A stretch of 64,000 bases of DNA from Phallusia mammillata (GCA_965637545.1 OZ281499.1:9858001-9922000); one strand, 5' to 3'; positions 3,001 through 23,148 are shown, counted from the stretch's first letter. Notes: generated by a model from the sequence alone, not told the origin. A program made the numbers and translations.

Positions 3001-6000
3001 CTAAACGCAAATTTGTATCTAAACAAATTCAGCAGTCAAAGGGGTACCCCAAAAATGTTGTTTCAATTTTACTCACATGTCGTTGGGAATTTCGACAGCA
3101 TGGTCTGAAATTTAAACAAACATTTATATCATAATGATAAGTTTTTATTTGTGGCAACGCCAAAGTAATCCCACCTGGCCTAGGTGGCAATGGCGGACCG
3201 AAAGATTTGAAATTATTTTTGATTGTACGTGTTCCTTCTTTGTCACTGTAACACATGAAGTTAGATGTTGAAATGCCACACACTCTTCTAATTGAAGAAA
3301 AAACTGAAGCACTTCTCGTTCTTTCTTCGCCGAAACTGCAACCGTGAGAAAAACACTGTTTTCAACAGGGGTATTAAAACTGAAACGTGACTTAATTGTC
3401 CATGGAGCAGAAATCAGTTAGCCAGATAGCTTAAATGACTGGCGATGTCTGGCAAACCAAAAACCTTCAAACCAAAAACAACTATTACCGAATCATGATT
3501 CTAAAGTAATAAAAAAAAACTTACAGTGGTTTTGTAGGAACTTGATTCACGCGCGCAGCACCTAAAAAATGATATCTTCCGAGTATCCATTTGGTTTAAA
3601 TGTGATAGAATAGACCACACCAGATGGTAATTTTTTACTCGATTCTTAAATTCACGTGTCAGTTATTTGGATTAAGAAACGTATTTTGTGTCTTAGGTAC
3701 GCAATTCACGGTTTCAAAGATTCTAACCAGAAACGAACAAGCCAATATATTTGTATCAAGCATGACGTTTCGACATCAACTTGTGTCATTCTCAAATGAA
3801 TAAATCTAAAAACAAGCAGCGCGTAAAAGCAGTAAAAGGGCTTTTTATCGCCGTTATCTTTACGTTTTAAACTGCCTTTCGCGCTAGTGTTTTTTTTGCC
3901 TTTTTTAATGCTTTTTAAACTGGTTTTACGCGCTGTTTGATTTTAGATTTATTCATTTGAGAATGACACAAGTTGATCGAAACGTCATGCTTGATACAAA
4001 TATTTTTTTTTCTGGTTAGTATTTTGTGCCGTTGATGGAAACAGAAGGCTTGCTGGAAGTTTGCCAATACTCTTTAATTTCAACAATATGACTAACCTAA
4101 AAGTTTCCTTCCAATTCGGGCATCAATAAGCGCCAACAACACAACACAATTTTCTTACCTGTTCGTGTCAATGGTCTGTGACTTACGAGGGTAGGGTTTT
4201 GGCGATTCGAAAAAGGTGTTGAAAGCTGTACATTGGGACTTTCTAAACACAAGTATCTTGCGTCAAATATTTTTTTTTAACTTTGCAGTTTTCAAGTTAA
4301 TACTACCTTGCTAAAAAAAAACAGTGCAACAGTTCAACCAAAGAATGCTAATTTGTTAACGTACGAAAAACATTTGCCTTCTTCTAAAAAATGGATGCAT
4401 TTACCTCCTTGATAATTAAGGTCTATGTATGATTCCTCGTCTGAAGACGATGATAGTGGGAGTTTTACTTCGGTCTCACTTTCGTCTTGTTGCATTCGGT
4501 TATAATGCTCCGTTTCGGCTGTGGATAAATAACTTTGTAAAGTTCCACTTAGAAATCTGTAAACTAAACTGTTGTATTCTTATCCACAAAACGCCAAATT
4601 AAAAATTCTTTGAGACTGCCAAAAGAAAGGCCAATTTAATATGAACTAAAAACTCCATGTGGTGTCTCTAGCTTTGACAAACTTACCAAGCCCACGGTTG
4701 AATGCGTGGTTGTACTCATTGCTGTGTTCGAAACGTGTTTCAAGCAAGTAAGGTTCCGAGTCTGAGGACGAACCTAAAATAACCACTAACAATTACTCTA
4801 CAATGTGACTATGTCACTAAGTTAAGAGTTAAGCCACATTATAAGCCTTACCGTTGGACATAAGTAGATTTACAAGTAGCCTACACAACGAGTAAGTTCT
4901 CAGCAAAGTGGAAAACTTGTGCACTAAGTAATAAAATTCGAATGTACTTTTGCTGTGCTGTTTCATTTTTTACTGGAACAGTAATGTTATGTATGTTTAT
5001 CGTATTGAATTTACAGCTCTCTATAAAGTTAAGTCCTGCCAAAATATGTGCAAATGTAAAGACTGTTTTTAGTACCTGATAGACAGGATGAATTTTCTGA
5101 ACATTCATCCTCAGAATCATTATTCGAGCTCACCCAGTTGCCACATGCACCTGGATCTACAAATAAAAAGAGTTCCAACTTATACCGGTATTTAGGTAAT
5201 CTAGACCACAGTTTTATCTATGTTCTTCAACGATGAACTTTCCTTTGTAATCCCCCGTGATAAAGTGGCAATTTAATCTTACTGTTAAAAGCCCCTTTTT
5301 AATTACACAATCTTAAAACCACAATATAGTCTTGTGTAAGCATGATGCACAAACACAAAGAAATACATAGGAATAAAAGTTGTGTCAGTCACGTTAATAT
5401 CCCCACCTCTCCCACTTAAAACCTTGCCATTACTCCAAATTTCGCCCCTAAAGAGTCAGTGATATTTAAGTTAATGGAAACCGTGGAGTACAACAGCCAA
5501 TATTTTCCAATTTTACACATTTTCTTTTGTTTTAGTAACCTGCTTTTTAACAATATTGTCAGTAATCTTGCTTAAAATGTTGAAATCAGACCCGAAATTG
5601 TGGTCCTAACCCGCTAGCAGAAGTCAAAAACTTGGGCCGAAACTGCATTAAAACCACCTGAAAATAGTCCCGAAAGTTAGTTTTGACAAAGCTTAAATTA
5701 CAATAAAAATGTTGTCGAGTGTCAAGTCAGGTTTAAACTATGTCTGTGTTTGTTTAACTTAAGTTCAAACCTGATCCATACCCCAAGCTAACCCGAAAAA
5801 CGGCCCGAATTAGGCCCGAAAGGTAATTTTACCAAGTTCCAGTTACAACACAAATGTGGCGTAACCCGGTTTGATTTACCACACTTGTTTGCATTGTTGC
5901 ACAACGGCTATTTTTACAATGTAATGTTTGCTAACCGAACAACGTTTCGACAGATGGTTGGCGTAAGTCAGCAACTGCTATCGGTTGTATTTGAATAAGG

Positions 6001-7284
6001 TAAATAAAGATTCATTTTTATCTGATCTGTTTTTAACGCTTTAGAGCCAATGGTTATGTGGAATGAACATGATACTATTTTATAAAGTGCGACTTGATCG
6101 TGTTTTCAAAACCCGTTTTGATTGATTTACCTTGTTTGTCAACACACGAATCCAGTGTTGGCCATTGCGCAGACGGAGGCCGCGGAAGCTTCTGTCGTTT
6201 GGGCATCTTGTCAAGAATGCGACCAACGGCTTTGTGCATCGCAAGTTGCTTTTGTTGCTCAACCAAATCAAGCAGTTGGATTTTTACATTGACCATTGCC
6301 GGTCGTTTTGATGCTGGCCCACTCCAACAACTTTCCACTATTTCTTGTAGTGTTATGATTGGAGAACGAGACACAGTCAGAGTTGGACGTTGTCCATTTA
6401 ATATTTCACTAAAGAGTGCCCCGTGCATCGCATTCTGGTATGGAAGTCTACGTTCCAACATAACATACAAAGTCATCCCATAGCTGTAAACGTCTTCCTC
6501 TTTTCTCATTGCAACGTGGGGATCCAAGAGTCTTTCAGGGGCTGCATACATGAATTTTACTTTGGTGCACTTGTTTTCCAACTCTGTGCTACCTAACCCT
6601 GTGCAATCGATGATCAATGCGCTGCCGAAAGTACCAATTTTACATCTTAAGTCGTCTGTCAAGAGAATGTTGTCTGGTTTCAAATCACAATGAGTCAGAC
6701 GTTTGTAGTCGGTAAAGTTATGCAGATGGGAAAGTCCATCGGCGATATCATAGGCCATACGAAGCAGCAAAATGTCCTTTATCTCAGTCGTGCGATCCAG
6801 CAGGAGACTTTTTAGGGTGCCGCGCGGCATGTGCTCCATTAAAATTCCGAACCCAGAATCCCATTTTGAAGCTCCATAAACACGAATAATTCTTTCGTGG
6901 CTGGCTTGTTGCAGGATGTCAATCTCTGTAAGAGCTCTAAAGCAAACACTGTCATGGTTATTATAAACAACAAACACAAAGATCAGGATGGATTTAGAAA
7001 GAGCACCCACTATTTCGTTTAAAATGACTGCGAAACACAAGCCTACACTAATGTACTTTCCACATTAATGAACGTAAATAAATCGTTTACATTATGTTTG
7101 ACAAAACTTACTCGTTTTCCTGTTGTTTCTGGTGTACATCTCCTTGGATGGAAACGCACTTGACTGCAATGTAATCGAGTGATTCATGATGACACAGTCT
7201 GCCGATACCAGATGACCCTGACCCCTGTTGACCCCTTCCACTCAAAGGAACACAACGAATGCTTGATGCTTCATAGTATTTTGC
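10..7284 (-). CDS. RIPK-like Ser/Thr pseudokinase with long acidic/Pro-rich tail (gene C). The first coding exon was not located and the gene runs off the left edge.
   Basis: Exon 7284-7112 encodes GSGSSG and IAVK. Exon 6936-6131 encodes HCDLKPDN, KIGTFGS (DFG>TFG), YAAPE, DVYSYG and CW..PAxRP. Phase-compatible downstream exons: 5156-5076, 4773-4687, 4563-4405, 4242-4159, 3561-3525. Further plausible exons lie near 3335-3170, 2664-2607, 2357-2324, 1617-1529 (LPPPIPLR), 149-101 and 43-10; that distal chain is less certain. The two kinase exons have the same boundaries and phases as gene B. Confidence 0.85.
433..715. mobile_element. MITE with perfect 36-bp terminal inverted repeats
   Basis: GGTAGAGCTACTAACACCATAACGCAAATGACAACC at 433-468 has its exact reverse complement at 680-715. 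The flanks CGTAAAATC / CAAAAAATC match 7/9, a possible decayed 9-bp TSD. Confidence 0.8.
816..1116. mobile_element. hAT (Charlie/Buster-type) MITE
   Basis: TIRs CAGGGGTGGGCAACC / GGTTGCCCACCCCTT; perfect 8-bp TSD CCCTAGGC at 808-815 and 1117-1124. Confidence 0.9.
3761..3798 (-). ncRNA. Minimal type I hammerhead ribozyme motif, U3-A8 core variant
   Basis: The minus strand reads CAT-UUGAGAA-U-GACA-CAAGUUGA-UGUC-GAAA-CGUC-AUG: 3-bp stem I (CAU/AUG), 4-bp stem II, palindromic ACGU stem III, GUC cleavage triplet. Confidence 0.65.
3954..3989 (+). ncRNA. Hammerhead motif, second arm of the foldback, with stem II damaged by a 2-nt deletion
   Basis: CAT-TTGAGAA-T-GACACAAGTTGATC-GAAA-CGTC-ATG; identical to the left-arm motif except for the 2-nt loss in stem II. 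Confidence 0.5.
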
Positions 7285-7709
7285 CTGAAACCAAAAAGTA
7301 ATAATTAGTAAGAATATACTTGATAATAATTCGTGTCGTGACTTTAGGTCTGAGTTATATCCTGGCTAAAAACATCAACTGGAGCCCTTTTTACTCTTAG
7401 TAAGACTGATGTTGCAACTTACCACTAACATTTGCGACATAATAGATGCCTAAAGCTTGTCGGTGGCAAATCTTTTCCGAACGCTATAATACGGGCAGTC
7501 AAACTGACGAAGACAATAACGGAAAATACCTTTGCGTTGCAATGATATTGCCTAAAAATTCCTAGCTATTCGTTACTGATTAATCCTACAGGGGAACCAG
7601 ACAGAAAAAAATCCCCATCAAATCGCCCCAATTCTACAGGGGAACCAGACAGAAAATACGTTTTTTAAGAAACACCGTAACGGCCTTGTTTTCACGGGGT
7701 TTAAACCCA

Positions 7710-7719: not shown

Positions 7720-8535
7720 TGGGACGAAAATGTATGTCTGTATATGCGTCAGCCCCGCAAACTTTTGGTGATGCTAAAAATGTGATAAATGGCTCTTGTT
7801 TCAACATGCAGAATTTAATGACACCAAAAACCAAACCAAATATTTCAAAAAAATACTAAATTTGAACAAAATAAATTTTTCGTTGCCATGGTTGGGCCTG
7901 GACCATATATAGTACGTATTCATTTTTATTCGTGATTTTTATAATCTTATAAAGTAAGGAGAAACGGACACACAACAACTCTGGGAATGCAAGTTGCGCT
8001 ATTAAGTCAAATATAACTGTGGGACTTTACGCTCTTTTGTGAGGTGAACCTGTTGAACTTGTAATGATGCTTCACTTGTTCCGAAGTGGCTCTTTTAGCT
8101 TTATTAGCAAATAGTAAAACTGGTATTTGAAAGGGCAAAACTAAATATCCGATGATGTGAATGACATAGTTTTTGTTGTCATAATTTTTTGTTGTTAATT
8201 TTTGTCGTTTTGTTGTTTACATTGTATTGAAACACTAACAACGCTCGTGTTACGAGAAATATAATTCCTATAGAACTTAAGTCTTAAGACAAGCATATAA
8301 GGTGTGTATGAATAAACCGCGCAAGTAAAACATTAAAAAAGGAAGAATATATCGACTTTAATAAACAAGTAACTTAGCCTAAGCAATCCTCACATGTTTA
8401 CAAAACACAATTCTGTGGAAGAAGGTTCTTTTGGCAAGCGAAGGCTGGGTTTTATGGTTGTGTGCACGAGAGATTTAATAACTTGGAACGATATAATGGT
8501 GGTGGCGTTTGAGCTCTATGGAAGTTCTGCAAAAC

Positions 8536-11500
8536 ATGACTGAAGTAAGTTTGTTTGGTAAATAGTTCTGATTACAAATTAATCAGATTTTACTGATTGT
8601 CAGTATCAGGTTAGCATACTATTGGCTACAAATATGTATATAACCAGAAATACCATTTAAACGTTACTGAATTAAACTTATGTTTGTGTAGTAAATAGTG
8701 GAAAGTCGTTTCTCTTACCAAAACGGTGTAATCTTCCTTTTAGCCCGGATTAGGCCTAAGTACCAACTTTACTTATGGTTTGGACTCGCCAACAATCGAT
8801 AAGTGTTTACTTAACGAAGCTGCACCTCCTACTGGTAAGAGTTTTCAGGGCACATTGGTGTTACAAACGTGGTTTATGCCATGAACAGTGTAAAACTTCA
8901 GTTGAATTGGTATATAACTGATGTTGATTGAGACCCTTGATTGAAATGTTGATTGAAAACAAAACGGTCTTTTTCTCATATGTAGGACTCACTTATAGCA
9001 AAACTGATTGATGTAGTGTCTTGTCATTTGAGGGTTGTTTTTAGCCGTAATTTGATATTCAACAAATGTGTAGTTCGAGTCGACACCAATCAAATTAATT
9101 TCTATTTGTTTTACTTTCCAGAACAAGTAACTAATGAAGATACTGACAGCGATTCAGACCTCTCCTTTGTATCCGCGTGTTCTCATTTTTCTTCGGGTCG
9201 GTACTTTTATCACTGCTTAGCAAAATGAGTATCATCATTAACACTTGCTTGTTATAACTTAGATGACGGTATAAGCCCATGTGTTGAATCGTGGAGGTTG
9301 AACGATCTAGAAGAAAAAACAGAACCTCTTTCAATTGGTAAGTGTAGTAATAACAAGTATTAGTTTCGGTAGAACGCCTCCAATGGGCCTGGCGTACTAT
9401 GATTTACGTATGAGTGTGTCGTGATTTGTTGCACCTATAACGTATTCAAAATGTTTATCTTTTTATTAAAAAGCACAATGCAAAATCTAGCCTGCACACA
9501 ATTTTTAGACCCTTTTTAGTCATTGGATAACACCTAACTTTTAATCGCTTTTTTCTACTTTATTACCCCAATTGTATTTTGGCGTTAACTTTGTTTGTTA
9601 ATAGGATGAAGATAGATATAATGGATTTTAGTCTGCTATAGTGTGATCGTAAACACGATCGCTGACAATTTTTTTGATCGATGTTTGATTTCAAAAATAG
9701 TTATGGTTTTTAGAAGGTATCAAACTATCTCGTGATCGTCAACCATCATATGTGGACTTTAACGACCAAGGATACGAAGAAAACAACAGTTCCTTTCCGA
9801 ACGGTAACTTGCGTTTTTATTGACATAAACCTTAATAAACTGACTTTGAGTGGAGTTTATTTCACGACATCATTGCACTGAACAATTTAGTGACATTTAG
9901 TATTTCATTTTTGGCCCAAATTTTTTTGCACACAGGAAAAATTAAGTTTAAAAACCTGTTTTGCGTTCTCAGAATATGAAATACCAATTAAACAGCCCTA
10001 CCAGGGATCTACAACAGATGAAACCACTGCAAGAGGTGCGAACATCAAGTATTACATTTCGGTTTCTAAGGTTTTACTTTCGTAATGTGTTGATCACCAT
10101 TGACTCTTAATGTTGGGGCAAGTTTTACTGGCAAGGATAAAGGGTGACATTTTATGAGGTTAAACTGTTTCTTTTTTCTCATTTTTCTACATAGTGAAAC
10201 AGTTATATAAAGCAGTGGTCGGCAACCGCAGGTCCGCAAAAAGTTCGTTATCGGGACGTATAGTTTTCAGGTTAAATAACTTACTTTGCAACATTTCCCG
10301 TGCAAGTTTGTTTAAAAATTATCCATCAGTTAGAGAAATAAATGTAGTCACCAATTTTATGGCTTGGAAATCTATTAAGTGTTCATCTGTTTCAGACAGC
10401 AATTTGGACGATTGCAGCGAATTCGATACAGATGAAGAGGAATATTTTGAACGAGTGTCTGCCTCAACATACAACGTACCACCACATGAAATCCAACAAG
10501 GTCGGGACAGACTATAACGAACTATGCTCTTGTTCAAATTTGTAAAAAAATGCAGGAGAGATTTGAGCACATAATGGACGGTGTTTGCTTTTCTATAAAG
10601 TTTATGGCCCCGTGAGCTGTTTCAAAAAGGATGATGACTTTAAACATTCCATCGTCGGTCACACATTTGGGCGTTTCGATCGTTAACTCAAAATATTTTT
10701 TTCTTACCTTGTCGTACAGCCAACAAATCGTATTTGCTTTTAAGTTGCAATGCAACACGTGTAATTGAGTGCAGCATACGTTAGGTAGGTATAACTTTAG
10801 GACACCTGGAATAAACGATTGTGTGTATGTCGGTTTAATTACCCAATTAAGTACACAGAAAAAAACATATTTGAAATATCTATAAAGTAATAAATCATTT
10901 GAACTTAGAGATGAAACCTTCAAGACCTTATTTAGTATGCATTGGGGTATTTGCAAAAGCAAGACAATTAGATTTCTGTGAGACATGTCGGGCAAAAAGA
11001 TTGGATCTCAAAGGGTCAAGCAAAATAACTTATATCAATTCCCAGCAAGTTCTAACTTATTGCTCCACACAGAACAAGAAAACCGCCACACAGATGGTCA
11101 CGTCTATGACGTTGTGAACGATCATTTCGGCCAATACGGACTTGTTCCAGACCATGTTAGGCACAAAGCCGCAATGTTTAAAGGTGAGTGTTTTAGTAAC
11201 CTGAAAATACCCAAACTGTAATAGACTATGTTACATTTCAGGCATGAAAACAATAAGCAATTTTCATACAATTTCCACTCAGTTTTTTCATCAGCCAAAC
11301 GAAAAGCACTAAAAAGTTATTTCAATGTGTGACGGGAGATTTTGTACTAAGAAAGCGCTTTAATAACCGTTATTGCAGACTTATCATGTTATGTGTCGCA
11401 GGTCGTCCAGAAGTTCCTCCACGAACAAATCGTCCAAAGCTACCGATCCCACAGTAAGTGATTTTACTAACATTAAAACAACTTCTATTTTGCTATTGAT

Positions 11501-13705
11501 CGTCGGTCAAACACGCGGCTTTGAAGAAATGATACAGCGTTGTGCAGATTAGCACATTCAGATTAAAACATGATTGTCAGAAAAGCTCGCGTTATGTTGA
11601 CAATAAACGTCTCGAAATTCCGTCTAATGTGCCTCGGCAAGGTCTTTTAACTAGTTTGTGTAATTACAAAACAAATTTCAATGACGAAACAACGTCTCGT
11701 TAAAAAATACTTTATTTTTTTGCGTATAAATAAATACGTAAACGCAATTTTTTGTTTTTTTTTTAATTTCAGGACGCCCGCAGACTCTGTATCTGGTGCT
11801 TCTGTAAGTTTTGTTGCCATATTTTTACAATCGAGTTTTCACATGTAACATTTTCAGCAACCATTACGGGATAAGGAGAAACAGGGATCTTCCGATACAA
11901 AAGGTTGGTATGCTAGTCAAATAGGGATAAATTAACAATTAAAATAAAATATTAACATTACAAAACATCCACCGACATCATGTGATTCAAGATGTGAGGT
12001 TTTTACAATTTTAAAAGCAACTTGCCAAATTACTTTTTTTCAGCAACGAGCCAAACATATACATTTTTAATCTTTTCTTAGCTAATTCGAAATTACAAAA
12101 TTGTTTTTGTCGAAACTGCAAATTAATAAGCCTGTTTAGCGTATGACTGACTGTCTGTAAGTTATATGCAGATAGCTATGTCTACAAAACAACAGCAATT
12201 ATTCTGATCTCAAAGAGGTGTTTGAAATGTAAATAGGTCATTTTCCAACTGGCTTTAATTTTTTTTTCCTTTACATAGATCCTTACATACATTCCAACAC
12301 AACTGCAAAGGCAAATCAGTCCAAACCACAACGAATTCCCTGTGGAAGTCATCTCACTTCTTACTTGACCAACAGAAGGCGACGTCTTAGTTTGTTAACA
12401 ACGCGAGGTGATTGTCAGGTTTCCTATTTCTAGACAATAACATGGCTTTGTAATGTGTTGCCACATCCCTAAAATAAAAATACTACTTCTTTGCGCCCTC
12501 TGGTGCCTATAAGCAATTGTATAATTAGTCTCGAAAAAATGTCATGAAATAATGCCAATATACATCATAGGGTGTTATATCTGATTGTATTAATGATTGT
12601 AGAAGCTGAGCAATTAGCAAATTTAACATTTGTAGTATATTTTTACAGTAGAACACAGCAAAGGCCGAAAAGCAAGTTTTCAAAAACGACTGTCGACGTT
12701 TTTAAAGAACAGAAGTAAGCAAAAATATCGAACAAGAATGGCCGAAAACAGCAACGTACTAAAAACGCAAAAAAGGGACATTATTTTCATGCTTTACAAT
12801 ACAAATAGAAATGTAACTTTTGCAAGAAATGCTTACTTAAGGTTTAAACAACTTTTACAATACATTGACAAATTGTGTTAATTACACAGCAGAGGCGACC
12901 TTTCATCAACACCTTTACCTGAAAGTCGTTGCTTATCTGAAACCAAGATTCAAATTATGTTTGCTGTCATGCAGATTTGAACTTGTACGCAACCCTAACC
13001 ACGGACAAAGCGATAAAACTCCGCAAAGAGGCAAAGACGTGCTTTAAGCAAGGGAAACAAGAAGCTAAGACACATGCTGCACAACTAGCGAAACTAACAT
13101 CCTCAGATGACCAAGATTCAACTTGCAATAATTTACTTCAACTTGCCGCTGAAGAACGAAGCAAAGGCAAATTAATTGACTCAGCAGTGCTTCTAATGAT
13201 GACAGCAGAGTGCCATGAAAACATACCGAACCCTAACTCCAAAATCAAAGGTTTAGCTGAATGTGCCCACGAGTTTTGTGTTCTTGGTGAGGAACTTGTA
13301 AATAATGGAAAGACGAATCTCGTTGTAAATCAAATTTTGCCTTACGTGACCGGGATTAAGCTAAAAGCGTCGCGAATCCATTGCAACAAAGCTTACAAGA
13401 TCGTGCTTGTGTTTGAGTGCGAATACAACCTTGGTTTACTCGAACATCTGGTTGGCCACAACTTTGCCGCAGAAGCCACCCTCAGCAGGGCCTCCTACTG
13501 GCCAGCTAAAGTGGTAAGGGGAATCAGCATCTATGTACAGTGCCTTATTGAACTTGGAGATGTTTATATCGACCAAAGTCTGACTACTTGCAATGCTGCT
13601 GTTGTAGAAAATGTAATCTCTTCTCAAGCAAGCCAAAATGCACAAGGGTTACTCAGGCCTAAAGAATATGTGGAGAAGGCGATTGATTGTTTTGAACGAG
13701 CATAA
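8536..13705 (+). CDS. Kinase-deleted paralog of gene B (gene A): linker plus TPR-like helical domain, about 557 aa
   Basis: Exons 8536-8544, 8744-8834, 9122-9196, 9263-9337, 9714-9803, 9973-10035, 10396-10500, 11073-11183, 11402-11453, 11773-11803, 11858-11903, 12279-12407, 12649-12714, 12975-13705 total 1674 nt in one open frame. Apart from the chimeric 8744-8834 exon, each is homologous to an exon of gene B. Only the last ~60 nt of the kinase exon remain (8777-8834). It ends at a TAA where B has CAA. Confidence 0.7.
10213..10370. mobile_element. Truncated hAT MITE (one end only)
   Basis: CAGTGGTCGGCAACCGCAGGTCCGC terminus; no matching second TIR seen. The right boundary is approximate. Confidence 0.5.
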
Positions 13706-14299
13706 GGCGCAATTCCGCACAGTCAGGACTTGTCCATCACCGAACGTGATCAATTTTGATTAATATGCAACAAAAAATTGCAACTCGCACTTGCTTCGAA
13801 AAAAGCTTTGGAGGAAATGGACCGTGAAGAACAAGCAACTTAGGCATATTACGAAGAGGTTGAAACCGTGTAATATACACTTTGTTTTTATCGTGTTGGT
13901 ATATACGTCCAACTGTTGCTGTGTGCAGACATACATTATTTGCCATTTATTGCGTGTCGACATAGGATGCCTACTGTTCTCGGAAAGGTCCCTTAAAAAC
14001 AATATATGTCAATTAATGCATGTAAGATACAAAAAGTGATATTACGATGTTATTATTGTACGTTATTACTGTACAATTTTTCTCTTTGTTGCCTTCCGAT
14101 AGAATTTAAAACGTCGTAGTATTTTAGCATGATATAACGAGGATTTTTCTGTGTCATGCTTTCAATCCCACATTTATTTCACTTTTTGGCAATCGTAGGG
14201 TTTTGCATTTGTTTTTCGCCACAGTGACATGATACCTAGACAGAAACGTGACATGAAGTAGCTTGCTCTTATGATAAATCCTATATAAACGTGTGGAAT

Positions 14300-14490
14300 C
14301 CCTTCTCGAGCAGGCCAAAATGCACAAGGCTTACTCAAGGCGAAAGAATGTGTGGAGAAGGCGATTGATTGTTCAACAAACACAAGGTGCAAATCTGCAC
14401 ACTTAGGAACTGTCTATTACCGAACATCCTATTTTTATCAAACATGTATGGAAAACGTACAGTTCGCACTTACTTCGAAACGAATGGTGT
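14300..14490 (+). pseudogene. Degenerate third copy of the 3' part of the TPR-like last exon
   Basis: CCTTCTCGAGCAGGCCAAAATGCACAAGGCTTACTCAAGGCGAAAGAATGTGTGGAGAAGGCGATTGATTG matches 13621-13690 and 22896-22965, with indels further on. Confidence 0.7.
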
Positions 14491-15385
14491 AACATTTGTT
14501 TTTGTCACATTGGCATAACCGACCAATTGCGGCTATGTGCAAGTATTGATTTTTTTATTGGCAGTTTGTCAATTGTGAGTCAGATCCAAAAATTGATTCT
14601 TGCTATTTGATTTCGCTTTTCATTCACTTTAATCAAAAACGTATAATACCCCGTCAACATTTTTCGCTTTTTATTCACTTTTACAGGGTTCAAGCACGAC
14701 CATCTTCGAGGTAGCAGGTCGCAAATTTTCCCTTTTGTCATAAGCAAACACTAAAACAACAGGTAAAGGACAAATGTAAATAACAGCTGTAAGTTTATGT
14801 AATAGAGAGAAAATGCTACGCTTGGAAAGCAGGTGGCGCCATTGAGTCAAGTATAACAGTCGGATTTTCCACTGTTTTGTAAGTTAAAACTGTATAGAGT
14901 GTTTTATTTTTAGTTTTGTCAGCAAATCGTAGAACTTGTATTTGAAAGAACGAAACCAAATATGTTAATATTTATTGTTTTTTAAAGATGTGAATGTCAT
15001 AATGGTTTTGTTGTTGACATTCCATTGAAATATCAGCAACGCTCGTGTTACAAAAAATAAAATTCGTACAGAAATCAAAATAAGCATACGTGTGTATGAA
15101 TAGACCGCGCGATTAAGAAAATAATAAAGTTAAAAATATATCAGCTATAATGAACAAGTAACTTAGCCTGGGTTATCCCCACGCGTTCACAAAACACAAT
15201 GCTGTGGAGGATGGTTTCTTTTGCAAACAAGGTTGGGTTTTATGGCTGTGTGCATGCGACTAACAATCCGAAGTTTGGATAGCCCATTATATTCGCCCAC
15301 GGCAGCATATAACCGCGGTTGACTGGTAGTTACGACAAAGAGATTTGATAACTTGGAGCGATGCTCTATGGAAGGCCTGCAAAAC

Positions 15386-18300
15386 ATGGCTGAAGTAAGT
15401 TTGTTTGGCAAATAGTTGTAACGAAAATAGTTGGCTATGAAAACATGGATTTAATAACACACATGTCACTTTCATTGGATTAAACCTGTATACTTATGCA
15501 GTGATGTCTAAAGTGTTGTTCGTGCCGAGACGGTGACAATGTTCATTTTGGCCCGGATTAAGCCAATTACAAGCTATATTTTTTTCAGCCTAAATACTTC
15601 AGGGCATCGAGTATTAGATGTGTGCCATCCAGTGCAGGGGGTCAACTGGGGTCGGGATCATCAGGTATTGTTAGATTGTGTCATCACACATATCATAACT
15701 ACATTGCCGTCAAATGTATTTCGATATACGGAGATGAGCAGCAAAGAGCAAGACAGGAGAAAGAGTAAGTTTTATCATTATTTTATAATAGACATGTGTT
15801 TTGAACTAATACAAACAACTGCGATATGATGATAGCCTACCGGTTCAGTAATAAATATACATAAGGACGTAATACCGGAATTTTCATTACTAAAACACCG
15901 TAATACAGCTCTAGCTTTCAAAACAATATTTTTTTTAACATTTAAATAACATACATATTTTACTCAAGTTTATCAACGTTGTTGTTTTTTAGGTTTGAAA
16001 AAAAACGATTGATAATTCTGTGTTAAAAATGCATATGTTTAGAATCCTTAACGAGGTTCAAATGCTTCAACAAGCCAATCATGAAAGAATCGTGCGCTTA
16101 CATGGGGTATCGAAATGGCCTTCTGGGATGGGGATCCTCATGGAGTATATGCCGCGTAGCAGCTTGAAAGATTTGCTGCTAAACCCAGCAATTCCTATTG
16201 ATGACGTACTGTTGCTTCGTATGGCATACGACGTAGCTGATGGACTTTCGTATCTCCATAACTTTACCGACTACAAACGTCTAACCCACTGCGATCTGAA
16301 ACCTGATAACATTCTTATGACCGATGACCTTAGGTGCAAAATTAGTGACTTTGGCAGTGCGAAAATAATTGATCAAACTTGGGTAGAGGGGCAACCAGAA
16401 AGAGTGAATGAAATTGCAAAAACTACATTCTTTTACACCGCCCCTGAAAGATTGAATGACTCGAAGATCGCCTTTAGAAAGGAAGAGGATGCCTATAGCT
16501 TTGGTATGACCTTGTATGTTATGTTGGCGCGAGAAGTACCGTATAAATGGCTTGGTGGTCTTTCGCGGGCAATCATAAATGGCCAACGGCCAAATGTCCC
16601 TCAGTCAACTTCAACTGCACTTGACGAACTGAAGACCATAATGCAAACGTGCTGGAGCGGAAAACCATCGTTACGGCCATCATTGCAAGAAGTAAAAATG
16701 CATCTTTCGAGGCTGGGTGGCAATAGGAATGACCCTGAAGTTTTAAGGGCAGTTGTGAAAGTCACTGAGAATCTTCCATTGCAAGCTATACCACCTTCTC
16801 CTGGTTTAGAATGGCCAACAATCGATCAGTGTCGTATTAATGAAGCTATACGTTCTACTGGTAAGAGTCTTAGTGTGTTACAAACTTAGTTTATGTACTT
16901 GACAGCAAGGTACTCATGCCAAACGGTTGGTGCACACTAAAACTGTTTAAAATCAAGTACAGATCAGACTTTTGTAAAGGTATTGGTCTCAGCTTTTTTT
17001 AAATCAGTGCAAAGTACGTAATTTGTCATCGTGCTGCTAGTTGATGCTGTTGTTTTTAACGTAAAGATTGTTTTCGGGAGTAAAATCACAACCAAACTTG
17101 AAAGATGGCACAAATGAAAGCTTACAGTTTAGGTGCGAGATTTCGGTGCACCTTCAAATAGTTGCCAGGTACGACATGTGATGGTTAGATTACATCATTG
17201 CGTTTGGGCTGTGAAAACATTTAAACGGAGCGGACAGCGGTTGTGGTAATTAAAGACATGTGACTTTTTGACAAGAATTCCTAAAAAATTAAATTGTAGA
17301 AGACGGATACAGTTAGAATAGGCATTTTCTCACTAAACCCGATCTTTATGAGTATTTCAATCGTTTTATGGGTGTCTTTCAACCAAGACATGAAAGCCAC
17401 ACGTTGTTTACACAACAAAGCTAATTTGAATGCCTTTGTCAGCCGCTAAATGGTAAAAGTTTTTGCGCTACTTTGAAAGTTCAACAGAAGAATCTTGCGC
17501 AATGTCAATACCATGTCGTGTTGCAACAGCTGAACAATGTCAAATGCGTAACAATTCTTAGAACTCTCGTTTACGAGGATAAAGTGAAAGTAAATAAAAG
17601 TTTAAACTTCTTTGTCCCTAACCACGTTAAAAAGTCGTCACTTTTAGTGAATGTTTTTTAATCTAATTATTTCTAACGCAGAAACCAATCTATACATTGC
17701 ACACATTTTTGAAATTATAAAAGCTGACATGTTTAGATTTGTTTATTTTCATGATAATATACTTGGCATTGTTTAATACGTTACTTTTAAAATAAAAACC
17801 ATTACTTGTCCCCAAAGAGAGAGATTTTGGGATAATTAAGTGCTTTCTCTAAGCATTTTATCACGATTTTTTGACAGGTATTTTTTTGCGTGTGATTTAA
17901 CCTATGAAAGTCAAACATTTTTTACACACGCTTGGAGGGCATCTATAAGGCTAACTTGATTGCTTTTGTCAATTGCAAAAGTTTTTGTCCTGCTTCGGAA
18001 GTTCAACAGAAGCATCTTGCGCAATGTCAATACCATGTCGTGTTGCAACAGCGGAACAGTGTTAAGTGCGTCATAATTCCTAGAACTCTCGTTTACGAGG
18101 ACAAAGTGAAAGTAAATAAAAGTTGGAACTCCTTTGTCCCTTACGATTTAAAAAAACGTTATTTTACGTGGATGTTTTTTAAACCAATTTTTTTTGACGC
18201 ACAAAACCCTAACCAGCCTATACATGGCACACCTTTGTAAAATTAAGCTAAAACGATTAGATTCGTTTTTATTTATTTATAATATTATACTTGACATTGT

Positions 18301-21300
18301 TTATTACGTTATAACGTAAAAATAAGAAAATACACTTGCAAAATTGTTGCCTGCATGGCATTGTTTATCGGCGCCGATGTAATACTTTGGGGCCAATTCT
18401 AAGAAACAATACTCATGTGCCCATTTGAGATCATTGTTGTAGTTGAGTCGACACTAATAAAACTAATTTATTTTTATTTCACACTCCCAGGACAAGTAAC
18501 TAATGAAGATACTGACAGCGACTCAGATCACTCCTTTGTATCGGCGTGTTCTCATTTTTCTTCGGGTCAGTACTTTTGTCACTAGTTAGTAAAGTTTTTA
18601 TCATCATGAGTTAACACTTGCTTGCTGTAACTGAGATGACGTTGTAGGTCCATTTGTTGATTCAGAAGAGTTAAACGACTTAGGAGAAACAACCGAGGCT
18701 CTTTCAGTTGGTATGTGTAGCAAGTCTAAGTCTCCGTTTCATAAGATTGTATTTTACAAAACCATCCAACATGATGTTGGTATATGTGTTCTACCTAACG
18801 TTTTTTGAGGATTACAATTAATCATGCTTTTTAGAAGGCACCGAAGTATGTCGAGATCGTCAACCATCATATGAAGGCACCGATAACAACAGTGTTTTTC
18901 TAGATGGTACTAACGTTTATTATGGCAAAGAAGCTTGGTTAACTGACATTGAGTTAAGTTTATTTCACTTGGTGGAAGAACGCACAACGACACAATTGGA
19001 CTCAAAATTCAATTGTTTTAACTGGACACAAAATTATTTTTATAAAGGACGGCATCACTGAAGCTGTTTGTAATGTTTTAAAATCTGTTTTCCGTTCTCA
19101 GAGAATGAAACACCAATTGAACATCAGGAAACAACGTATGAAAGCATTTGGTGCGAAACAATTGGTGCAAACACCAGAAAACGTAATTTACATTTTGATT
19201 TTCAAGTTTTTACATTTGTAACCGTGTGTTGCCACATACACTATAAACTATTATTTGGCTATTCCGTCGGCTAGACCAGACTAGAAGCTGTAAATTTATA
19301 CCCTGACTTAAGATTTGTACTAAAGGTAAGCAACGTATATGTTTTCTTATAAAATTGTACTGTTATTTGTTTTGGTAGTACCACCTTCCGATCTACACGG
19401 AGTGATGGGATCTCAAGCAAATGATGAAACAAATGAAAACATACAACTTGATCGAGAAGGTTAATTTGGTTTTCAAAAAACGTACATCTCTAATTTATTA
19501 TTTTTATATTTTTTAAACACATCTTTCACTAATAATTTGCAAGTTTTAGTTTGCCAAGAATAATTGGTGATATTTTGATAAGGTTTGTTTAATTCATTAT
19601 ATTTTTCTATTATTGTTTTTTACAGTAGTAACACGACAAGGTAGCGTAGTTCATTTAAAAAAGCAAGGCATCTTTTTTAGACGATGAGTTGGAAGATTGC
19701 CGTGAATTCGATTCCGATGAGGAAGCAAATTTTGAGCAAATGGCTCCATCAAGTGACAACTTACGCCAAGATGAAGTCCAAGAAGGTAAGGACAGCTATA
19801 ACATCAAACCCTTTGTCCGCGCTCCTGTTAAAGTCATCAAATGAATTGTTCCTATTGTCTGACGCAGGGGTTGAATACATAAGCCGTGTTTGCCTTTCAA
19901 TAAAGTTATTGTGTCGCCTAAGCATTTCATCGTCGGCCACACAATTAAACGTGCGTCGCTTCCAACTCCAACAAGTTTTTTTTGTCGTACGGCCAACAAA
20001 AATCGTAATTGCATCCCAACAGGACAGCTATCCGTGCAATTGTGTGGAACATAGCTTAGACAGGTGTAGGACGCCTGAAACAAACCAATTAAATTATCAG
20101 CGAGTCCTAACTCATTGCTCTCTACAGAACAAGAAATCCGCCACACAGATGATCACAACTACGACGTTGTAAATGACCACTTGGGCCATTACGGACTTGC
20201 TCCTGGCAACGTTAGGGATAAAGCCACGAAGTTTAAAGGTGAGTGTTTTGGTAACCTAAAGATACCGAAACTGTCATAGGCTATATTACAATTCAGGCAT
20301 AAAAACAATCCACAATTTTAATACAACTCTTTTATTTCATCAGGCAAACGAAAAGCACCATAAAAATGTTCAACGAGCAAATTATGTGATAGAAGGCTTC
20401 ATACTACTAAAGCTATTTTCTAAAAGTAATTGCTGATTTATTATGTTATTTGTCGCAGGTCGACCTGAAGTTCCTCCTCAAACAAATCGTCCAAAGCTAC
20501 CAAAACCAACGTAAGTGATTTTACTTACAGTATGTTTGCCCCCACGCGTCTGCCAACTGCATTTATCAGATAACAGGAAAAAACAAAATCGGAGTTTGTT
20601 CTTTGTTTCTGTCAAAGATCAACATTGAAAATTTCAGAGAGCGTTGTAAAAATTGTCACATTGAGATTAAAACAATATGTCACAAGACTAGGTCTACATT
20701 CTGGTAGCAATTAATGTGTCGTAATTCCGACCTTTGCAAAACAAATGTTAATTACGAAACAATGTCTGATCTTAACGAGAAACATTCCTACATTTTAATT
20801 TTTGCACGTCGAGCTATACCCCAAACCTAGCTCCTTATAGGTCCTACAGTCAGAAATTAGGCGCTCAAACAAAAAACGTGGAGAACAATTGCAATGACAC
20901 AGAAATTAAAACTGATTCGTCTATGGTTCCAATATTCTTTATTTAAGGACTGTTCTCTTATTTTGGATTGGATTGGATAAATAAATACGTAAACGCAATT
21001 TTATTTTGTTATTATTTCAGGACGCCTACACACTCTATATGTGGAGCTTCCGTAAGTTTTGTTGGTATACTTTTACTGTCAAGTTTTCACTTGTAATGTT
21101 TTGAGCAACTGTTGCAGGATAAGGAGAAACCGGGACCTTCCAACACAAAAGGTTAGTATGTATGTGCATACATATTAAACACTTTACAATATCAAACGTG
21201 AGCTCTGTTTCAAATTTTTTTGTGTTTAAATGGGTATAATATCACTTACAGCACATAAGTATCACTTAAACCATCCACCGGCATTGTATGATTCGGGGCG

Positions 21301-23148
21301 CGTTATATTCACAATTTTGAAAGAAAAAAATCTAACTCAAAGATATTTAAATTATTCTTTTTTAATTAGCAGTGGTAAAATTATTACGCCAGTTCGTCTG
21401 ATCGCAGCAATGACTCACTGTAAGTTATATGCATATATTATATTGCTATGTCCACAAAACAAAAACAAAAAATTCTTGTCTGAAATAAGGACTTAAAATG
21501 TAATTAGGTCATTTTTTCTAACTGGCTTCACATACAATTTTTTTCATAGATTCCGACCCCACGACTAAAGAAAATCCTTCCAAACCACAACGAATTCCCA
21601 GCGAAAGTCATCTGACTTCCTACTTGACGAACAGAAGACGACGCCTTAGTTCCTTAACCACGCACGGTGATTGCCAGGTTTTATTTCTTGGCAATAAAAA
21701 TGCAATGACATAACTTTGTAATGTGTTACAGCAAGAGTAGACTGATATATGTAAGCACTTGATGCCCTCTGGTACCGAACAAATTACAGTTGTAGTCTTA
21801 CAAAATTTTAGCCTTGACAAACCGTAATATATGGTACATCAGTCGGTTTAATAATAATTGTTACAGATTAGCAATTACCAAATTTAACATTTGTAGTTTA
21901 TTTTGCAGTGGGACAAAGCAAAGGCGGAAAAGCAAGTTTTAAAAAACGACTGTCAACGTTTTTGAAAAGCAGGGGTAAGTACAAAAGACTAAAACAATGG
22001 TTCAGCCAAAAACAACAACGAAAAAAATTGGGGCACATTGATATTTATTTTCATGCTTTAAAGTACAAACAGAAAAGTAACTTTCACATGAAAAACGTAC
22101 TTAACGTTTAAACAGATTTTACTTGACAAAATGGGTTAAACAGCGGAGGTGAATTTCCATCGACACCTAAAAGCCATTGTTTACCTTCAACCCATATTAA
22201 AACTTATGTTTGGGGCCGTGGCAAAGTAATTCAATCAGTAAATTTGCAGATTCGAATTTGTACGCAACCCTTATCACGGACAATGCGCTAAAACTCCGAA
22301 AACAAGCCAAGTCGTGCTTCAAGGAAGGAAAACAAGAAGCAAAGACATACGCTGCACAATTAGCCAAACTAACACCCACAGATTACCAAGATTCAACTTG
22401 CAATAATTTACTTCAACTTGCCGCTGAAGAACGAAGCAAGGGCAAATTAATTGACTCAGCAGTGCTTCTAATGATGACAGCAGAATCCTATGACCGCATG
22501 GTGAAACCTAACTCTAAAATCAAAGGTTTAGCTGAATGTGCCCACGAGTTTTATGTTCTTGGTAAGGAACTTGTAAGTGATGGAAAGAGGAATCTCGTTG
22601 TGAATGTAATTTTGCCTTACGTGACCGGGATTAAACTAAAGGCATCGCGCATCCACTGCAACAAAGCTTACAAAATCGTGCTTGTGTTTGAGTGCGAATA
22701 TAACCTTGGTTTAATCGAGCATTTAGTTGGTCACAACTTTGCTGCAGAAGCCACCCTTAGCAAAGCGACGTACTGGCCGGCTCAAGTGGTAAAAGGAACC
22801 AGTATCTATGTACAGTGCCTTATTGAACTTGGGGATGTTTATATCGACCAAAGTCTGACTACTTGCAATGCTGCTGTTGCAGAAAATGTAATCCCTTCTC
22901 AAGCAAGCCAAAATGCACAAGGGTTGCTCAGGCCGAAAGAATACGTGGAGAAGGCGATTGATTGTTTTGAACGAGCACAAGGCGCAATTCAGCACAGTCA
23001 GGACTTGTCTATCACCGAACGTCCGCAATTTTACCGAATATGCAGAGAAAAATTGCAACGTACACTGGCTTCGAAAATATCTCTGGAGGAAATGGACTGT
23101 GAAGAACCAGCAACTTACGCATGTTACGATTACGAAGCCGTTCAATGA
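15386..23148 (+). CDS. RIPK-like non-RD protein kinase with disordered Tyr/Pro-rich linker and C-terminal TPR-like helical domain (gene B), about 936 aa
   Basis: 17 exons: 15386-15394, 15589-15764, 16043-16860, 18491-18565, 18636-18710, 18835-18906, 19102-19164, 19379-19459, 19626-19640, 19681-19785, 20128-20238, 20459-20510, 21021-21051, 21106-21151, 21550-21666, 21909-21974, 22250-23148, totalling 2811 nt in an open frame. Intact motifs: GSGSSG, IAVK, alphaC Glu, HCDLKPDN, DFG, YTAPE, DAYSFG, CW..KPSLRP. Confidence 0.9.
17418..18330. repeat. Intronic tandem duplication (about 380-bp units, about 520-bp period)
   Basis: About 17418-17800 aligns with about 17947-18330; both share GTTCAACAGAAG(A/C)ATCTTGCGCAATGTCAATACCATGTCGTGTTGCAACAGC. 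Confidence 0.8.

What the first reader, a model, noticed from the sequence alone, without database searches (positions are those of the whole stretch)
8536..13870. Kinase deleted but reading frame rescued by a new splice acceptor: a probable decoy paralog rather than a pseudogene
Seen: relative to B, A lacks about 1.2 kb (B about 15575-16800) holding both kinase exons. At the junction A reads TTCCTTTTAG|CCCGG where B reads CATTTTGGCCCGG, so A has an AG acceptor B lacks. The resulting 91-nt exon (8744-8834, phase 0 to 1) joins the ATG exon to all downstream exons in frame. All 14 exons are open up to TAA 13703-13705, while two more stops occur in the next 55 codons. Inference: selection preserved a protein of about 557 aa that keeps the YDVV/YEIP and PEVPPR docking motifs and the TPR-like domain but cannot phosphorylate, like cFLIP or MyD88s decoys.
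Basis: partly seen in the sequence, partly recalled or inferred. Interest (0 to 1): 0.78.

Follow-up and report, generated by a model that had tools for sequence, protein, structure and literature searches.

The report
Kinase-less copy of sea-squirt kinase gene
A sea-squirt gene copy has lost the enzyme part of its immune-type kinase neighbour but keeps an unbroken reading frame that looks protected by selection, so it may make a non-enzymatic partner or competitor protein, though no RNA evidence could be obtained.

Summary
A (8536-13705) and B (15386-23148) are tandem paralogs. B encodes a RIPK1-like kinase, an acidic/proline linker and an orphan all-helical C-terminal domain. A lacks about 1.2 kb holding B's two kinase exons. 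A 14-exon, all GT-AG model gives an open 557-codon frame ending at TAA 13703-13705, with two more stops behind it.

- For selection: E3 to the stop (509 aligned codons, 23 splice sites) carries no disabling lesion. Under neutrality that bounds drift to about 0.02 substitutions per site, under 15% of A's lineage. In the last exon dN/dS is 0.23.
- Against, or untested: there is no outgroup, so constraint cannot be assigned to A alone. The age of the deletion is unknown. The remnant of the kinase exon evolves at dN/dS about 1. The 8744 acceptor is mediocre.
- RNA contigs of three runs showed neither A nor B, so that test is blank.
- The AG is probably not new. The same intron-1 13-mer with AG occurs in an older paralog, Z, so B's GG looks derived.
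- YEIP and PEVPPR are not conserved in B.

A decoy role is pure inference. A recently dead pseudogene remains a serious rival. The scan has noted this gene family elsewhere in this genome.

The parts
8536..8544 (+). A exon 1 (ATG ACT GAA), donor GTAAGT
   Evidence: 8513-8567 is 93% identical to B 15363-15417. P = 0.002 against a 77% background, chosen post hoc.
8738..8750 (+). Intron-1 13-mer TTTTAGCCCGGAT holding the AG used as acceptor in the model
   Evidence: Exact copies of the degenerate 13-mer occur only in intron 1 of Z (7359-7371, AG), A (AG) and B (15546-15558, GG).
8744..8834 (+). A exon 2 of the model (91 nt, phase 0 to 1). The first 10 codons or so come from former intron 1. The last 19-20 codons are the remnant of kinase exon 3.
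   Evidence: Among 14 AGs in 8560-8830, only 8744 and 8804 give an in-frame open exon. The remnant has dN/dS 1.1 over 19 codons.
8770..8778 (+). Approximate junction of the 1.2-kb deletion (B about 15580-16789 missing)
   Evidence: Three-way alignment. X2 contig spans it with 0 differences.
9122..9196 (+). A exon 3 (phase 1-1)
   Evidence: Homolog of B 18491-18565.
9263..9337 (+). A exon 4
   Evidence: E3-E4 dN/dS 0.29.
9714..9803 (+). A exon 5 (18 nt longer than B's)
9973..10035 (+). A exon 6 (holds YEIP; B has NETP)
10396..10500 (+). A exon 7 (acidic)
   Evidence: E5-E7 dN/dS 0.67.
11073..11183 (+). A exon 8 (YDVVN motif, shared with B)
11402..11453 (+). A exon 9 (RPEVPPR...RPKLP, proline motif; B has PEVPPQ)
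11773..11803 (+). A exon 10
11858..11903 (+). A exon 11
12279..12407 (+). A exon 12 (donor GTGATT as in B)
12649..12714 (+). A exon 13
   Evidence: E10-E13 dN/dS 0.27.
12975..13705 (+). A exon 14: helical C-terminal domain, 242 codons, 87% identical to B's, ending in TAA 13703-13705
   Evidence: With remnant R as outgroup the T at 13703 is derived in A.
13706..13870 (+). Former coding tail behind the stop (homolog of B's last 56 codons), with stops TGA 13757-13759 and TAG 13841-13843
   Evidence: Differences 8/9/7 by codon position. 15 of 50 codons changed in protein sense, against 32 of 242 before the stop (p = 0.006).
15386..23148 (+). Paralog B: 16-exon model, 927 codons. Kinase exons are 15589-15764 and 16043-16860.
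6133..7440 (-). Older paralog Z, head to head with A: ATG exon 7440-7423 and kinase exons 7284-7112 and 6936 to about 6133. The DFG triplet reads TFG.
14294..14480 (+). Remnant R of a family last exon, lying between A and B; decayed

Best explanation
A is a tandem duplicate of B, whose layout is a RIPK1-like kinase, an acidic/proline linker built of phase 1-1 mini-exons, and an orphan all-helical C-terminal domain.

Shown:
- A 1.2-kb genomic deletion, running from the end of intron 1 into kinase exon 3, removed the whole catalytic domain.
- A C-to-T change at 13703 cut off the last 56 codons.
- What remains is an ATG exone with conserved flanks, a 91-nt bridging exon, 11 linker exons and 242 codons of the helical domain. 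Together they form one open 557-codon frame with every splice site intact.

Inferred from substitution and lesion patterns: this frame was kept by purifying selection for at least about 85-90% of A's time since the duplication. Most likely it is still translated into a kinase-less protein.

Inferred without a test: the bridging exon uses an AG that already existed in a conserved intron-1 element of the family, not a newly made one. The product would bind partners of the shared linker motif (YDVV) and of the 87%-identical helical domain without phosphorylating anything. It would therefore act as a competitor or adaptor for B-type kinases.
For: Structure: the structure and frame are. The junction is confirmed in a second data set.

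No disabling lesions:
- E3 to the stop (509 aligned codons, 23 splice sites) carries none.
- Substitution-only simulation gives P(no stop) = 0.06 at t = 0.05 and 0.0025 at t = 0.1.
- Adding frameshifts (intron-derived indel rate of 0.05 per substitution) and splice sites gives P = 0.04 at t = 0.02. The 95% bound is t about 0.019, which is 8-14% of the per-lineage distance.

Exons versus introns:
- Aligned introns are 67% identical with 45 indels, 34 of them not multiples of three. Exon lengths differ only by 18, 12 and 12 nt.
- dN/dS is 0.23 for the last exon and 0.40 for the linker.
- The last-exon total dN of 0.065 is below the 0.14 that a neutral A lineage alone would contribute.

Contrast at the stop:
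- Codon-position differences are 20/13/40 before it and 8/9/7 after it (p = 0.036).
- Protein-changing codons are 13% before and 30% after (p = 0.006).

Upstream parts: the ATG exon flanks are 93% identical to B. E3-E7 contain no internal ATG, so they can be translated only from an upstream start, which the E1-E2 model supplies.
Against: - A carries two large lesions typical of pseudogenes: loss of the catalytic exons and a premature stop followed by decay.
- There is no outgroup, so all dN/dS values are pairwise and partly reflect B's constraint. The codon-position pattern alone would allow A to have been neutral for up to about a third of the time.
- The age of the deletion is unknown. A deletion within the last ~0.02 substitutions per site would explain everything without any selection on a kinase-less protein.
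- The remnant of exon 3 inside E2 has dN/dS about 1 and lost the Trp shared by B and Z.
- The acceptor at 8744 is mediocre. An in-frame open bridging exon would arise by chance in roughly 1 case in 5.
- With R as outgroup, the tail behind the stop is fast in B too (A-specific 7, B-specific 4). The contrast at the stop is therefore partly a property of the region.
- dS is lower in the last exon (0.28) than in the linker (0.50), so some gene conversion from B is possible.
- RNA contigs of three runs show no A exon, though they show no B either.
- The T at 13703 is not confirmed by the second data set.
- The genome holds many such kinase genes (unchecked notes). An intact-looking truncated copy could be picked out by chance among many.
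Confidence: 0.5

Rival explanations
1. A is a young unprocessed pseudogene. It was a working full-length kinase paralog, already tolerating a shortened C-terminus, until a recent deletion removed the kinase. The rest of the frame has simply not had time to decay, and the in-frame AG is a coincidence.
For: - A has two major lesions.
- The exon-3 remnant evolves at dN/dS about 1.
- The acceptor is weak.
- The chance of an in-frame open bridging exon is about 0.2.
- No RNA was seen.
- A decayed family fragment, R, lies next door, which shows birth-and-death turnover at this locus.
- Constraint cannot be dated relative to the deletion because there is no outgroup.
Against: - It requires the deletion to fall in the last ~0.02 substitutions per site, 8-14% of A's lineage.
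- The ATG exon and its flanks are kept at 93% identity.
- The AG-bearing intron element is retained in A although B lost the AG.
Confidence: 0.35
2. A is a live coding gene, but not with the modelled 5' end. It would use another first exon or a spliced-leader acceptor, or exon 2 is skipped or replaced. The protein would then start differently, and the 'rescued frame' is not what is used.
For: - The E2 acceptor is mediocre, and the intron-derived E2 codons show no detectable constraint.
- My own knowledge, not tested here: many tunicate genes are trans-spliced.
Against: - E3 is a phase-1 exon with no in-frame ATG before exon 8, so it needs an upstream start in the right phase.
- The E1 flanks are conserved.
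- Joining E1 directly to E3 runs into a stop at once (sequence).
Confidence: 0.12
3. The deletion or the stop is an assembly or haplotype artefact.
For: The T at 13703 is not seen in X2 contigs. The only contig laid there is B-like, at about double depth.
Against: - A contig of a second data set crosses the junction without a single difference.
- A-specific and B contigs have equal depth.
- A and B differ by about 20% throughout.
- The hole in the last exon is explained by six A/B-identical runs of 31-55 nt.
Confidence: 0.03

Closest known systems
cFLIP (CFLAR), the catalytically dead tandem paralog of caspase-8/-10 (from general knowledge, not tested here)
   Same: It is a tandem duplicate sitting beside its active enzyme paralog. 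It keeps the interaction parts, has lost catalysis, and is proposed to compete for the same partners.
   Different: cFLIP keeps a full-length pseudo-enzyme fold, and its expression and function are proven. A has physically lost the catalytic exons and part of its C-terminal domain, and nothing is known of its expression.
Kinase-less or kinase-dead regulators of death-fold and RIPK/IRAK signalling, such as MyD88s and IRAK-M (general knowledge)
   Same: A non-catalytic relative keeps docking parts of a signalling kinase pathway.
   Different: MyD88s is a splice form of one gene. IRAK-M is a pseudokinase with an intact fold. A is a separate gene made by genomic deletion. No RHIM, death domain or other RIPK/IRAK docking domain was identified in A or B.
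Unprocessed (duplicated) pseudogenes in birth-and-death immune gene clusters
   Same: It is a tandem copy with a large deletion of essential exons and a premature stop followed by decay. A decayed fragment, R, lies nearby.
   Different: The remaining 509 aligned codons and 23 splice sites carry no lesion and show a coding pattern of substitution.
RIPK-like kinase / linker / TPR-tail gene family noted elsewhere in this genome (scan notes s1-399058, s1-385371; unchecked)
   Same: B has exactly this layout. A has the linker and tail of it.
   Different: A lacks the kinase. A's helical domain found no relative among 1.84 billion representative proteins. I could not confirm that it is the same tail domain as in the other cluster.

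Membership tests
Pseudogene (non-functional duplicate) | Frameshifts, internal stops or lost splice sites in the remaining exons | tested here: not met
   There are none in 14 exons and 26 splice dinucleotides up to TAA 13703. P = 0.04 at t = 0.02 under neutrality.
Pseudogene (non-functional duplicate) | Loss of essential parts relative to the parent gene | tested here: met
   Both kinase exons are deleted. The last 56 codons are cut off by a derived stop.
Pseudogene (non-functional duplicate) | Neutral substitution pattern (dN/dS about 1) on its own branch | tested here: inconclusive
   Pairwise dN/dS is 0.23-0.40 in E3-E14 but 1.1 in the exon-3 remnant. No outgroup was available to isolate the A branch.
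Pseudogene (non-functional duplicate) | No transcription or translation | tested here: inconclusive
   Three RNA-labelled runs show no contig on A exons, but none from B either.
Non-catalytic decoy paralog (cFLIP-like) | Derived from an active enzyme paralog, with catalysis lost | tested here: met
   B's kinase carries the VAVK-type Lys, HCDLKPDN and DFG motifs. A has no kinase sequence.
Non-catalytic decoy paralog (cFLIP-like) | Keeps the interaction domains of the active paralog | tested here: inconclusive
   The helical domain is 87% identical over 242 residues but lacks the last 56. YDVV is kept. YEIP and PEVPPR are not shared with B. No binding partner is known.
Non-catalytic decoy paralog (cFLIP-like) | Maintained by selection after loss of catalysis | tested here: inconclusive
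   There is strong evidence for constraint on the frame overall, but the deletion cannot be dated.
Non-catalytic decoy paralog (cFLIP-like) | Expressed and inhibits signalling of the active paralog | not testable with these tools
   This needs cDNA, proteomics and co-expression assays.
RIP kinases (for B, the parent type) | Kinase domain closest to RIPK1-4 | tested here: met
   The best PDB sequence matches are RIPK1 (E 3e-26) and RIPK4 (5e-24), only slightly ahead of EGFR, LCK and JAK2.
RIP kinases (for B, the parent type) | RHIM, death domain, CARD or ankyrin tail | tested here: not met
   There is no Pfam family on the C-terminal exon at E up to 0.01. The small linker exons were not scanned separately.
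TPR repeat domains | Match to TPR sequence profiles | tested here: not met
   No Pfam hit for A's or B's last exon. No relative at all among 1.84 billion representatives.
TPR repeat domains | Stacked helix-turn-helix repeat fold | tested here: inconclusive
   The AF2 model is all-helical (13 helices), but mean pLDDT is 51 and only residues 1-130 are confident. The Foldseek best match is the kinesin light chain TPR at E 0.06. VIA best Z is 11 with solenoid/TPR-like chains, within the range common for any helical repeat. Atlas features point to TPR families at 0.93-0.94 with low recognition.

The most novel reading that the evidence does not exclude
The kinase in this sea-squirt family behaves as a removable cassette, and A is a selected 'cassette-less chassis'. 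A conserved intron-1 element carrying a dormant AG (present in Z and A, lost in B) allowed the ATG exon to be rejoined in frame to the linker once the kinase exons were deleted. The result is a kinase-less linker-plus-helical-domain protein that tunes signalling of B-type kinases by competing for their partners. It would be an invertebrate-chordate, gene-level analogue of cFLIP for a RIPK-like pathway.
Probability: 0.15. Interest if true: 0.6.

Novelty: new member of a known kind. Interest (0 to 1): 0.36.

Why it matters
If A is expressed, it is a natural example, in the closest invertebrate relatives of vertebrates, of a signalling kinase turning into a non-catalytic regulator through a single genomic deletion. 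The active parent gene lies next door for direct comparison. It would give a simple handle, A against B, on an expanded and unstudied RIPK-like family whose helical tail domain has no known relatives. If A is not expressed, it is an ordinary young pseudogene in a birth-and-death cluster. In that case the lesson is methodological: an intact frame in a truncated duplicate is not enough without an outgroup or RNA.

Tried and rejected
1. RNA test. One run search found only two holders of the stretch, both DNA-like (share 0.93 and 0.89), and twelve RNA-labelled runs with no words of it. Laying three of those runs at 80% likeness showed only interspersed repeats in A's introns. No exon of A appeared, and no B transcript appeared on the 90%-identical last exon. 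There was thus no positive control and the test is blank.\n\n2. Outgroup hunt. HMMER of A's last exon against 1.84 billion representatives gave 0 hits. An exact-product look-up of the ATG-started part of the last-exon ORF found nothing on record. The scan-notes look-up by sequence was blank. A branch-specific dN/dS test was therefore impossible.\n\n3. Was Z the 'missing' kinase of A, moved by an inversion? Rejected. Z has its own ATG exon and its own copy of the exon-3 end that A also keeps. It is also more diverged from B (55% amino-acid identity, about 70% nucleotide identity) than A is.\n\n4. B exon 8 (19379-19459). No remnant was found in A intron 6: local alignment score 15, against a shuffle mean of 18.\n\n5. 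Remnant R as outgroup for the 3' end. It polarised the stop (derived in A), but counts were too small to show an A-specific speed-up.\n\n6. Literature. Two searches for RIPK-type kinase-less paralogs or tunicate RIPK families gave nothing specific.\n\n7. The 1-mismatch copy of the intron 13-mer at 47796-47808 lies in unrelated sequence.\n\n8. Exons were searched by reference only.


Full report
**What is there**

The window comes from a sea squirt (scan note). Its GC content is 34-43%.

Two tandem genes on the + strand are paralogs: A (8536-13705) and B (15386-23148). blastn aligns their promoter region, the ATG exon and every downstream exon at 68-93% identity.

I built both exon models by hand from the sequence and checked them by script.
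- B has 16 exons and 927 codons.
- A has 14 exons and 557 codons.
- Every intron in both is GT-AG.

B exon 2 (15589-15764) and exon 3 (16043-16860) encode a protein kinase.
- Pfam PK_Tyr_Ser-Thr matches at E 1e-36.
- The closest solved sequences are RIPK1 (E 3e-26) and RIPK4, only a little ahead of EGFR, LCK and JAK2.
- The catalytic motifs are present.

Behind the kinase come small, mostly phase 1-1 exons rich in Asp, Glu, Ser and Pro. A large last exon follows.
- Its 298 residues match no Pfam family.
- A's 242-residue version matched none of 1.84 billion representative proteins.
- An AlphaFold model is all-helical but confident only for residues 1-130.
- The best fold matches are TPR or solenoid proteins at non-significant levels: Foldseek E 0.06 and VIA Z 11, within the range normal for any helical repeat. 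Language-model neighbours are TPR families.
- 'TPR-like' is therefore a reasonable label but not established.

The three-way alignment shows the following.
- A's intron 1 follows B's intron 1 up to about 8775.
- From about 8778, A follows the last 70 nt or so of B exon 3.
- About 1.2 kb of B (about 15580-16789) is missing. This stretch holds the exon-2 acceptor, exon 2, intron 2 and most of exon 3.

At 8742-8743 A has AG where B has GG. An exon 8744-8834 (91 nt) joins ATG-ACT-GAA (8536-8544) to exon 3 (9122) in the frame used by all later exons.

The frame is open up to TAA 13703-13705. TGA 13757 and TAG 13841 follow in the same frame.

A contig of another public run crosses 8300-9191 without any difference. 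A-specific and B contigs have equal depth. The deletion is therefore not an assembly slip. That run is probably from the same animal, as it shows no difference over about 4.5 kb.

The T at 13703 could not be confirmed there. The only contig laid at that place is B-like, at about double depth. A and B share six identical runs of 31-55 nt in this exon, which break or collapse de Bruijn contigs.

**Is the frame selected?**

Pairwise Nei-Gojobori values for A against B:

| Region | dN/dS | dS | dN |
|---|---|---|---|
| Last exon before the stop | 0.23 | 0.28 | 0.065 |
| Linker exons E3-E13 | 0.40 | 0.50 | 0.202 |
| 19-codon remnant of exon 3 inside E2 | 1.1 | 0.276 | 0.304 |

A neutral A lineage alone would contribute dN of about 0.14 in the last exon, which is more than the total observed.

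The contrast at the stop is as follows.
- Differences by codon position are 20/13/40 before it and 8/9/7 after it (p = 0.036).
- Protein-changing codons are 32 of 242 before and 15 of 50 after (p = 0.006).

Aligned introns are 67% identical and carry 45 indels, 34 of them not multiples of three. Exon lengths differ only by 18, 12 and 12 nt.

I simulated substitutions on the 509 aligned codons from E3 to the stop.
- The chance of no new stop is 0.06 at 0.05 substitutions per site.
- It is 0.0025 at 0.1 substitutions per site.

Adding frameshifts at the intron-derived indel rate, and hits on 23 splice sites, gives P = 0.04 at t = 0.02. The 95% bound is about 0.019, which is 8-14% of A's share of the divergence.

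So A was kept as a reading frame for nearly all of its history. If it is dead, it died very recently.

**Limits of that argument**

- There is no outgroup. The helical domain has no hits anywhere. Exact look-ups and the scan's sequence index were blank. The constraint therefore cannot be assigned to the A branch or to the time after the deletion.
- With the decayed fragment R (14294-14480) as outgroup, the stop is derived in A. But the tail behind it changes fast in B too: A-specific 7, B-specific 4. Before the stop the counts are 2 and 2. Part of the contrast is regional.
- The lower dS of the last exon leaves room for some gene conversion from B.
- The exon-3 remnant evolves neutrally and lost a Trp shared by B and Z.
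- The genome is reported to hold many RIPK-like kinase genes (unchecked notes). A freshly truncated copy could be picked out by chance.

**The 'new acceptor'**

A third, older paralog, Z, lies head to head with A on the minus strand.
- Its ATG is at 7440, and its kinase exons are 7284-7112 and 6936 to about 6133.
- It is 55% identical to B's kinase.
- Its DFG triplet reads TFG.

The 13-mer TTTT[A/G]GCC.GGAT occurs exactly three times in the window, each time in intron 1: Z (AG), A (AG) and B (GG). Shuffles expect 0.67 matches even when one mismatch is allowed.

By parsimony the AG is ancestral and B lost it. The acceptor is therefore a pre-existing intronic AG, not an innovation of A.

As an acceptor it is mediocre on a matrix built from the 29 other acceptors of A, B and Z.
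- It scores 2.5, against a leave-one-out range of 0.1-12.8.
- 17% of all AGs in the window score at least as well.
- Among the 14 AGs between 8560 and 8830, only 8744 and a hopeless one at 8804 give an in-frame open exon.

The model is the only simple way to translate E3-E7. These exons have no internal ATG, and joining E1 directly to E3 hits a stop. Still, an in-frame outcome had roughly a one-in-five chance.

**Motifs**

- YDVV(N) is shared by A and B. A similar YDVIN sits in the neighbouring gene at 33148-33077.
- YEIP (B: NETP) and PEVPPR (B: PEVPPQ) are not conserved between the paralogs. Calling them retained docking motifs is not justified.

**RNA**

Contigs of three of the RNA runs, laid at 80% likeness, covered only three interspersed repeats in A's introns. 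No exon of A appeared. Nothing from B appeared either, even on the last exon where B is 90% identical. The test is blank and not negative.

**Verdict**

- Most likely (about 0.5): A is a kinase-less, C-terminally shortened paralog whose frame is kept by selection and which still encodes a linker-plus-helical-domain protein. A competitor or adaptor role towards B-type kinases is inference only.
- About 0.35: A is a very young pseudogene.
- About 0.12: A is a live gene with a different 5' end.
- About 0.03: the deletion or stop is an artefact.

In kind it resembles known non-catalytic paralogs such as cFLIP beside caspase-8 (general knowledge). It is a possible new member of a known kind in an unstudied tunicate family.

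Noticed in passing
window 6133-7440 (-): Older paralog Z lies head to head with A, with the two ATGs about 1.1 kb apart. Its kinase frame is intact, but the DFG aspartate is replaced (CKIGTFGS against B's CKISDFGS), so it may be a pseudokinase. Acidic and proline-rich ORFs further downstream on the minus strand (4334-4495, 3029-3283) may be its linker exons.
   Followed up: partly
window 7359-7371 (-), 8738-8750 (+), 15546-15558 (+): A 13-mer, TTTT[A/G]GCC.GGAT, is conserved in intron 1 of all three paralogs although the introns are otherwise diverged. In Z the stretch from this AG to the exon-2 acceptor is 81 nt, in frame and open. It may be an alternative acceptor or a regulatory element.
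   Followed up: partly
window 14294-14480 (+): A decayed fragment of a family last exon lies between A and B (77-81% identity to A and B, with a 2-nt deletion relative to A and B). It is a relic of a further, mostly deleted copy.
   Followed up: partly
window 9365-9425, 10211-10277, 10866-10963: Short interspersed repeats in A's introns are present at very high depth in the DNA run (up to about 156,000) and in contigs of all three RNA-labelled runs.
   Followed up: no
window 17417-17783 and 17947-18311: A 365-nt direct duplication (79% identity) lies inside B's long intron 3.
   Followed up: no
window 19379-19459 (+): B's 81-nt phase 1-1 mini-exon has no counterpart or remnant in A. Linker exons seem to be gained or lost as in-frame units.
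   Followed up: partly
window 33077-33148 (-): A weak match (tblastn E 1.6) of B's 'RH..HN..YDVVN' exon falls within the neighbouring gene at 30-39.6 kb (YDVIN). That gene may belong to the same wider family.
   Followed up: no
window 13000-13775 (+): In run X2 no contig with A's own letters was laid over parts of A's last exon (for example 13157-13240 and 13439-13760). B-like contigs lie there at 266-656 depth. This is probably graph collapse between paralogs, but it is unexplained in detail.
   Followed up: partly
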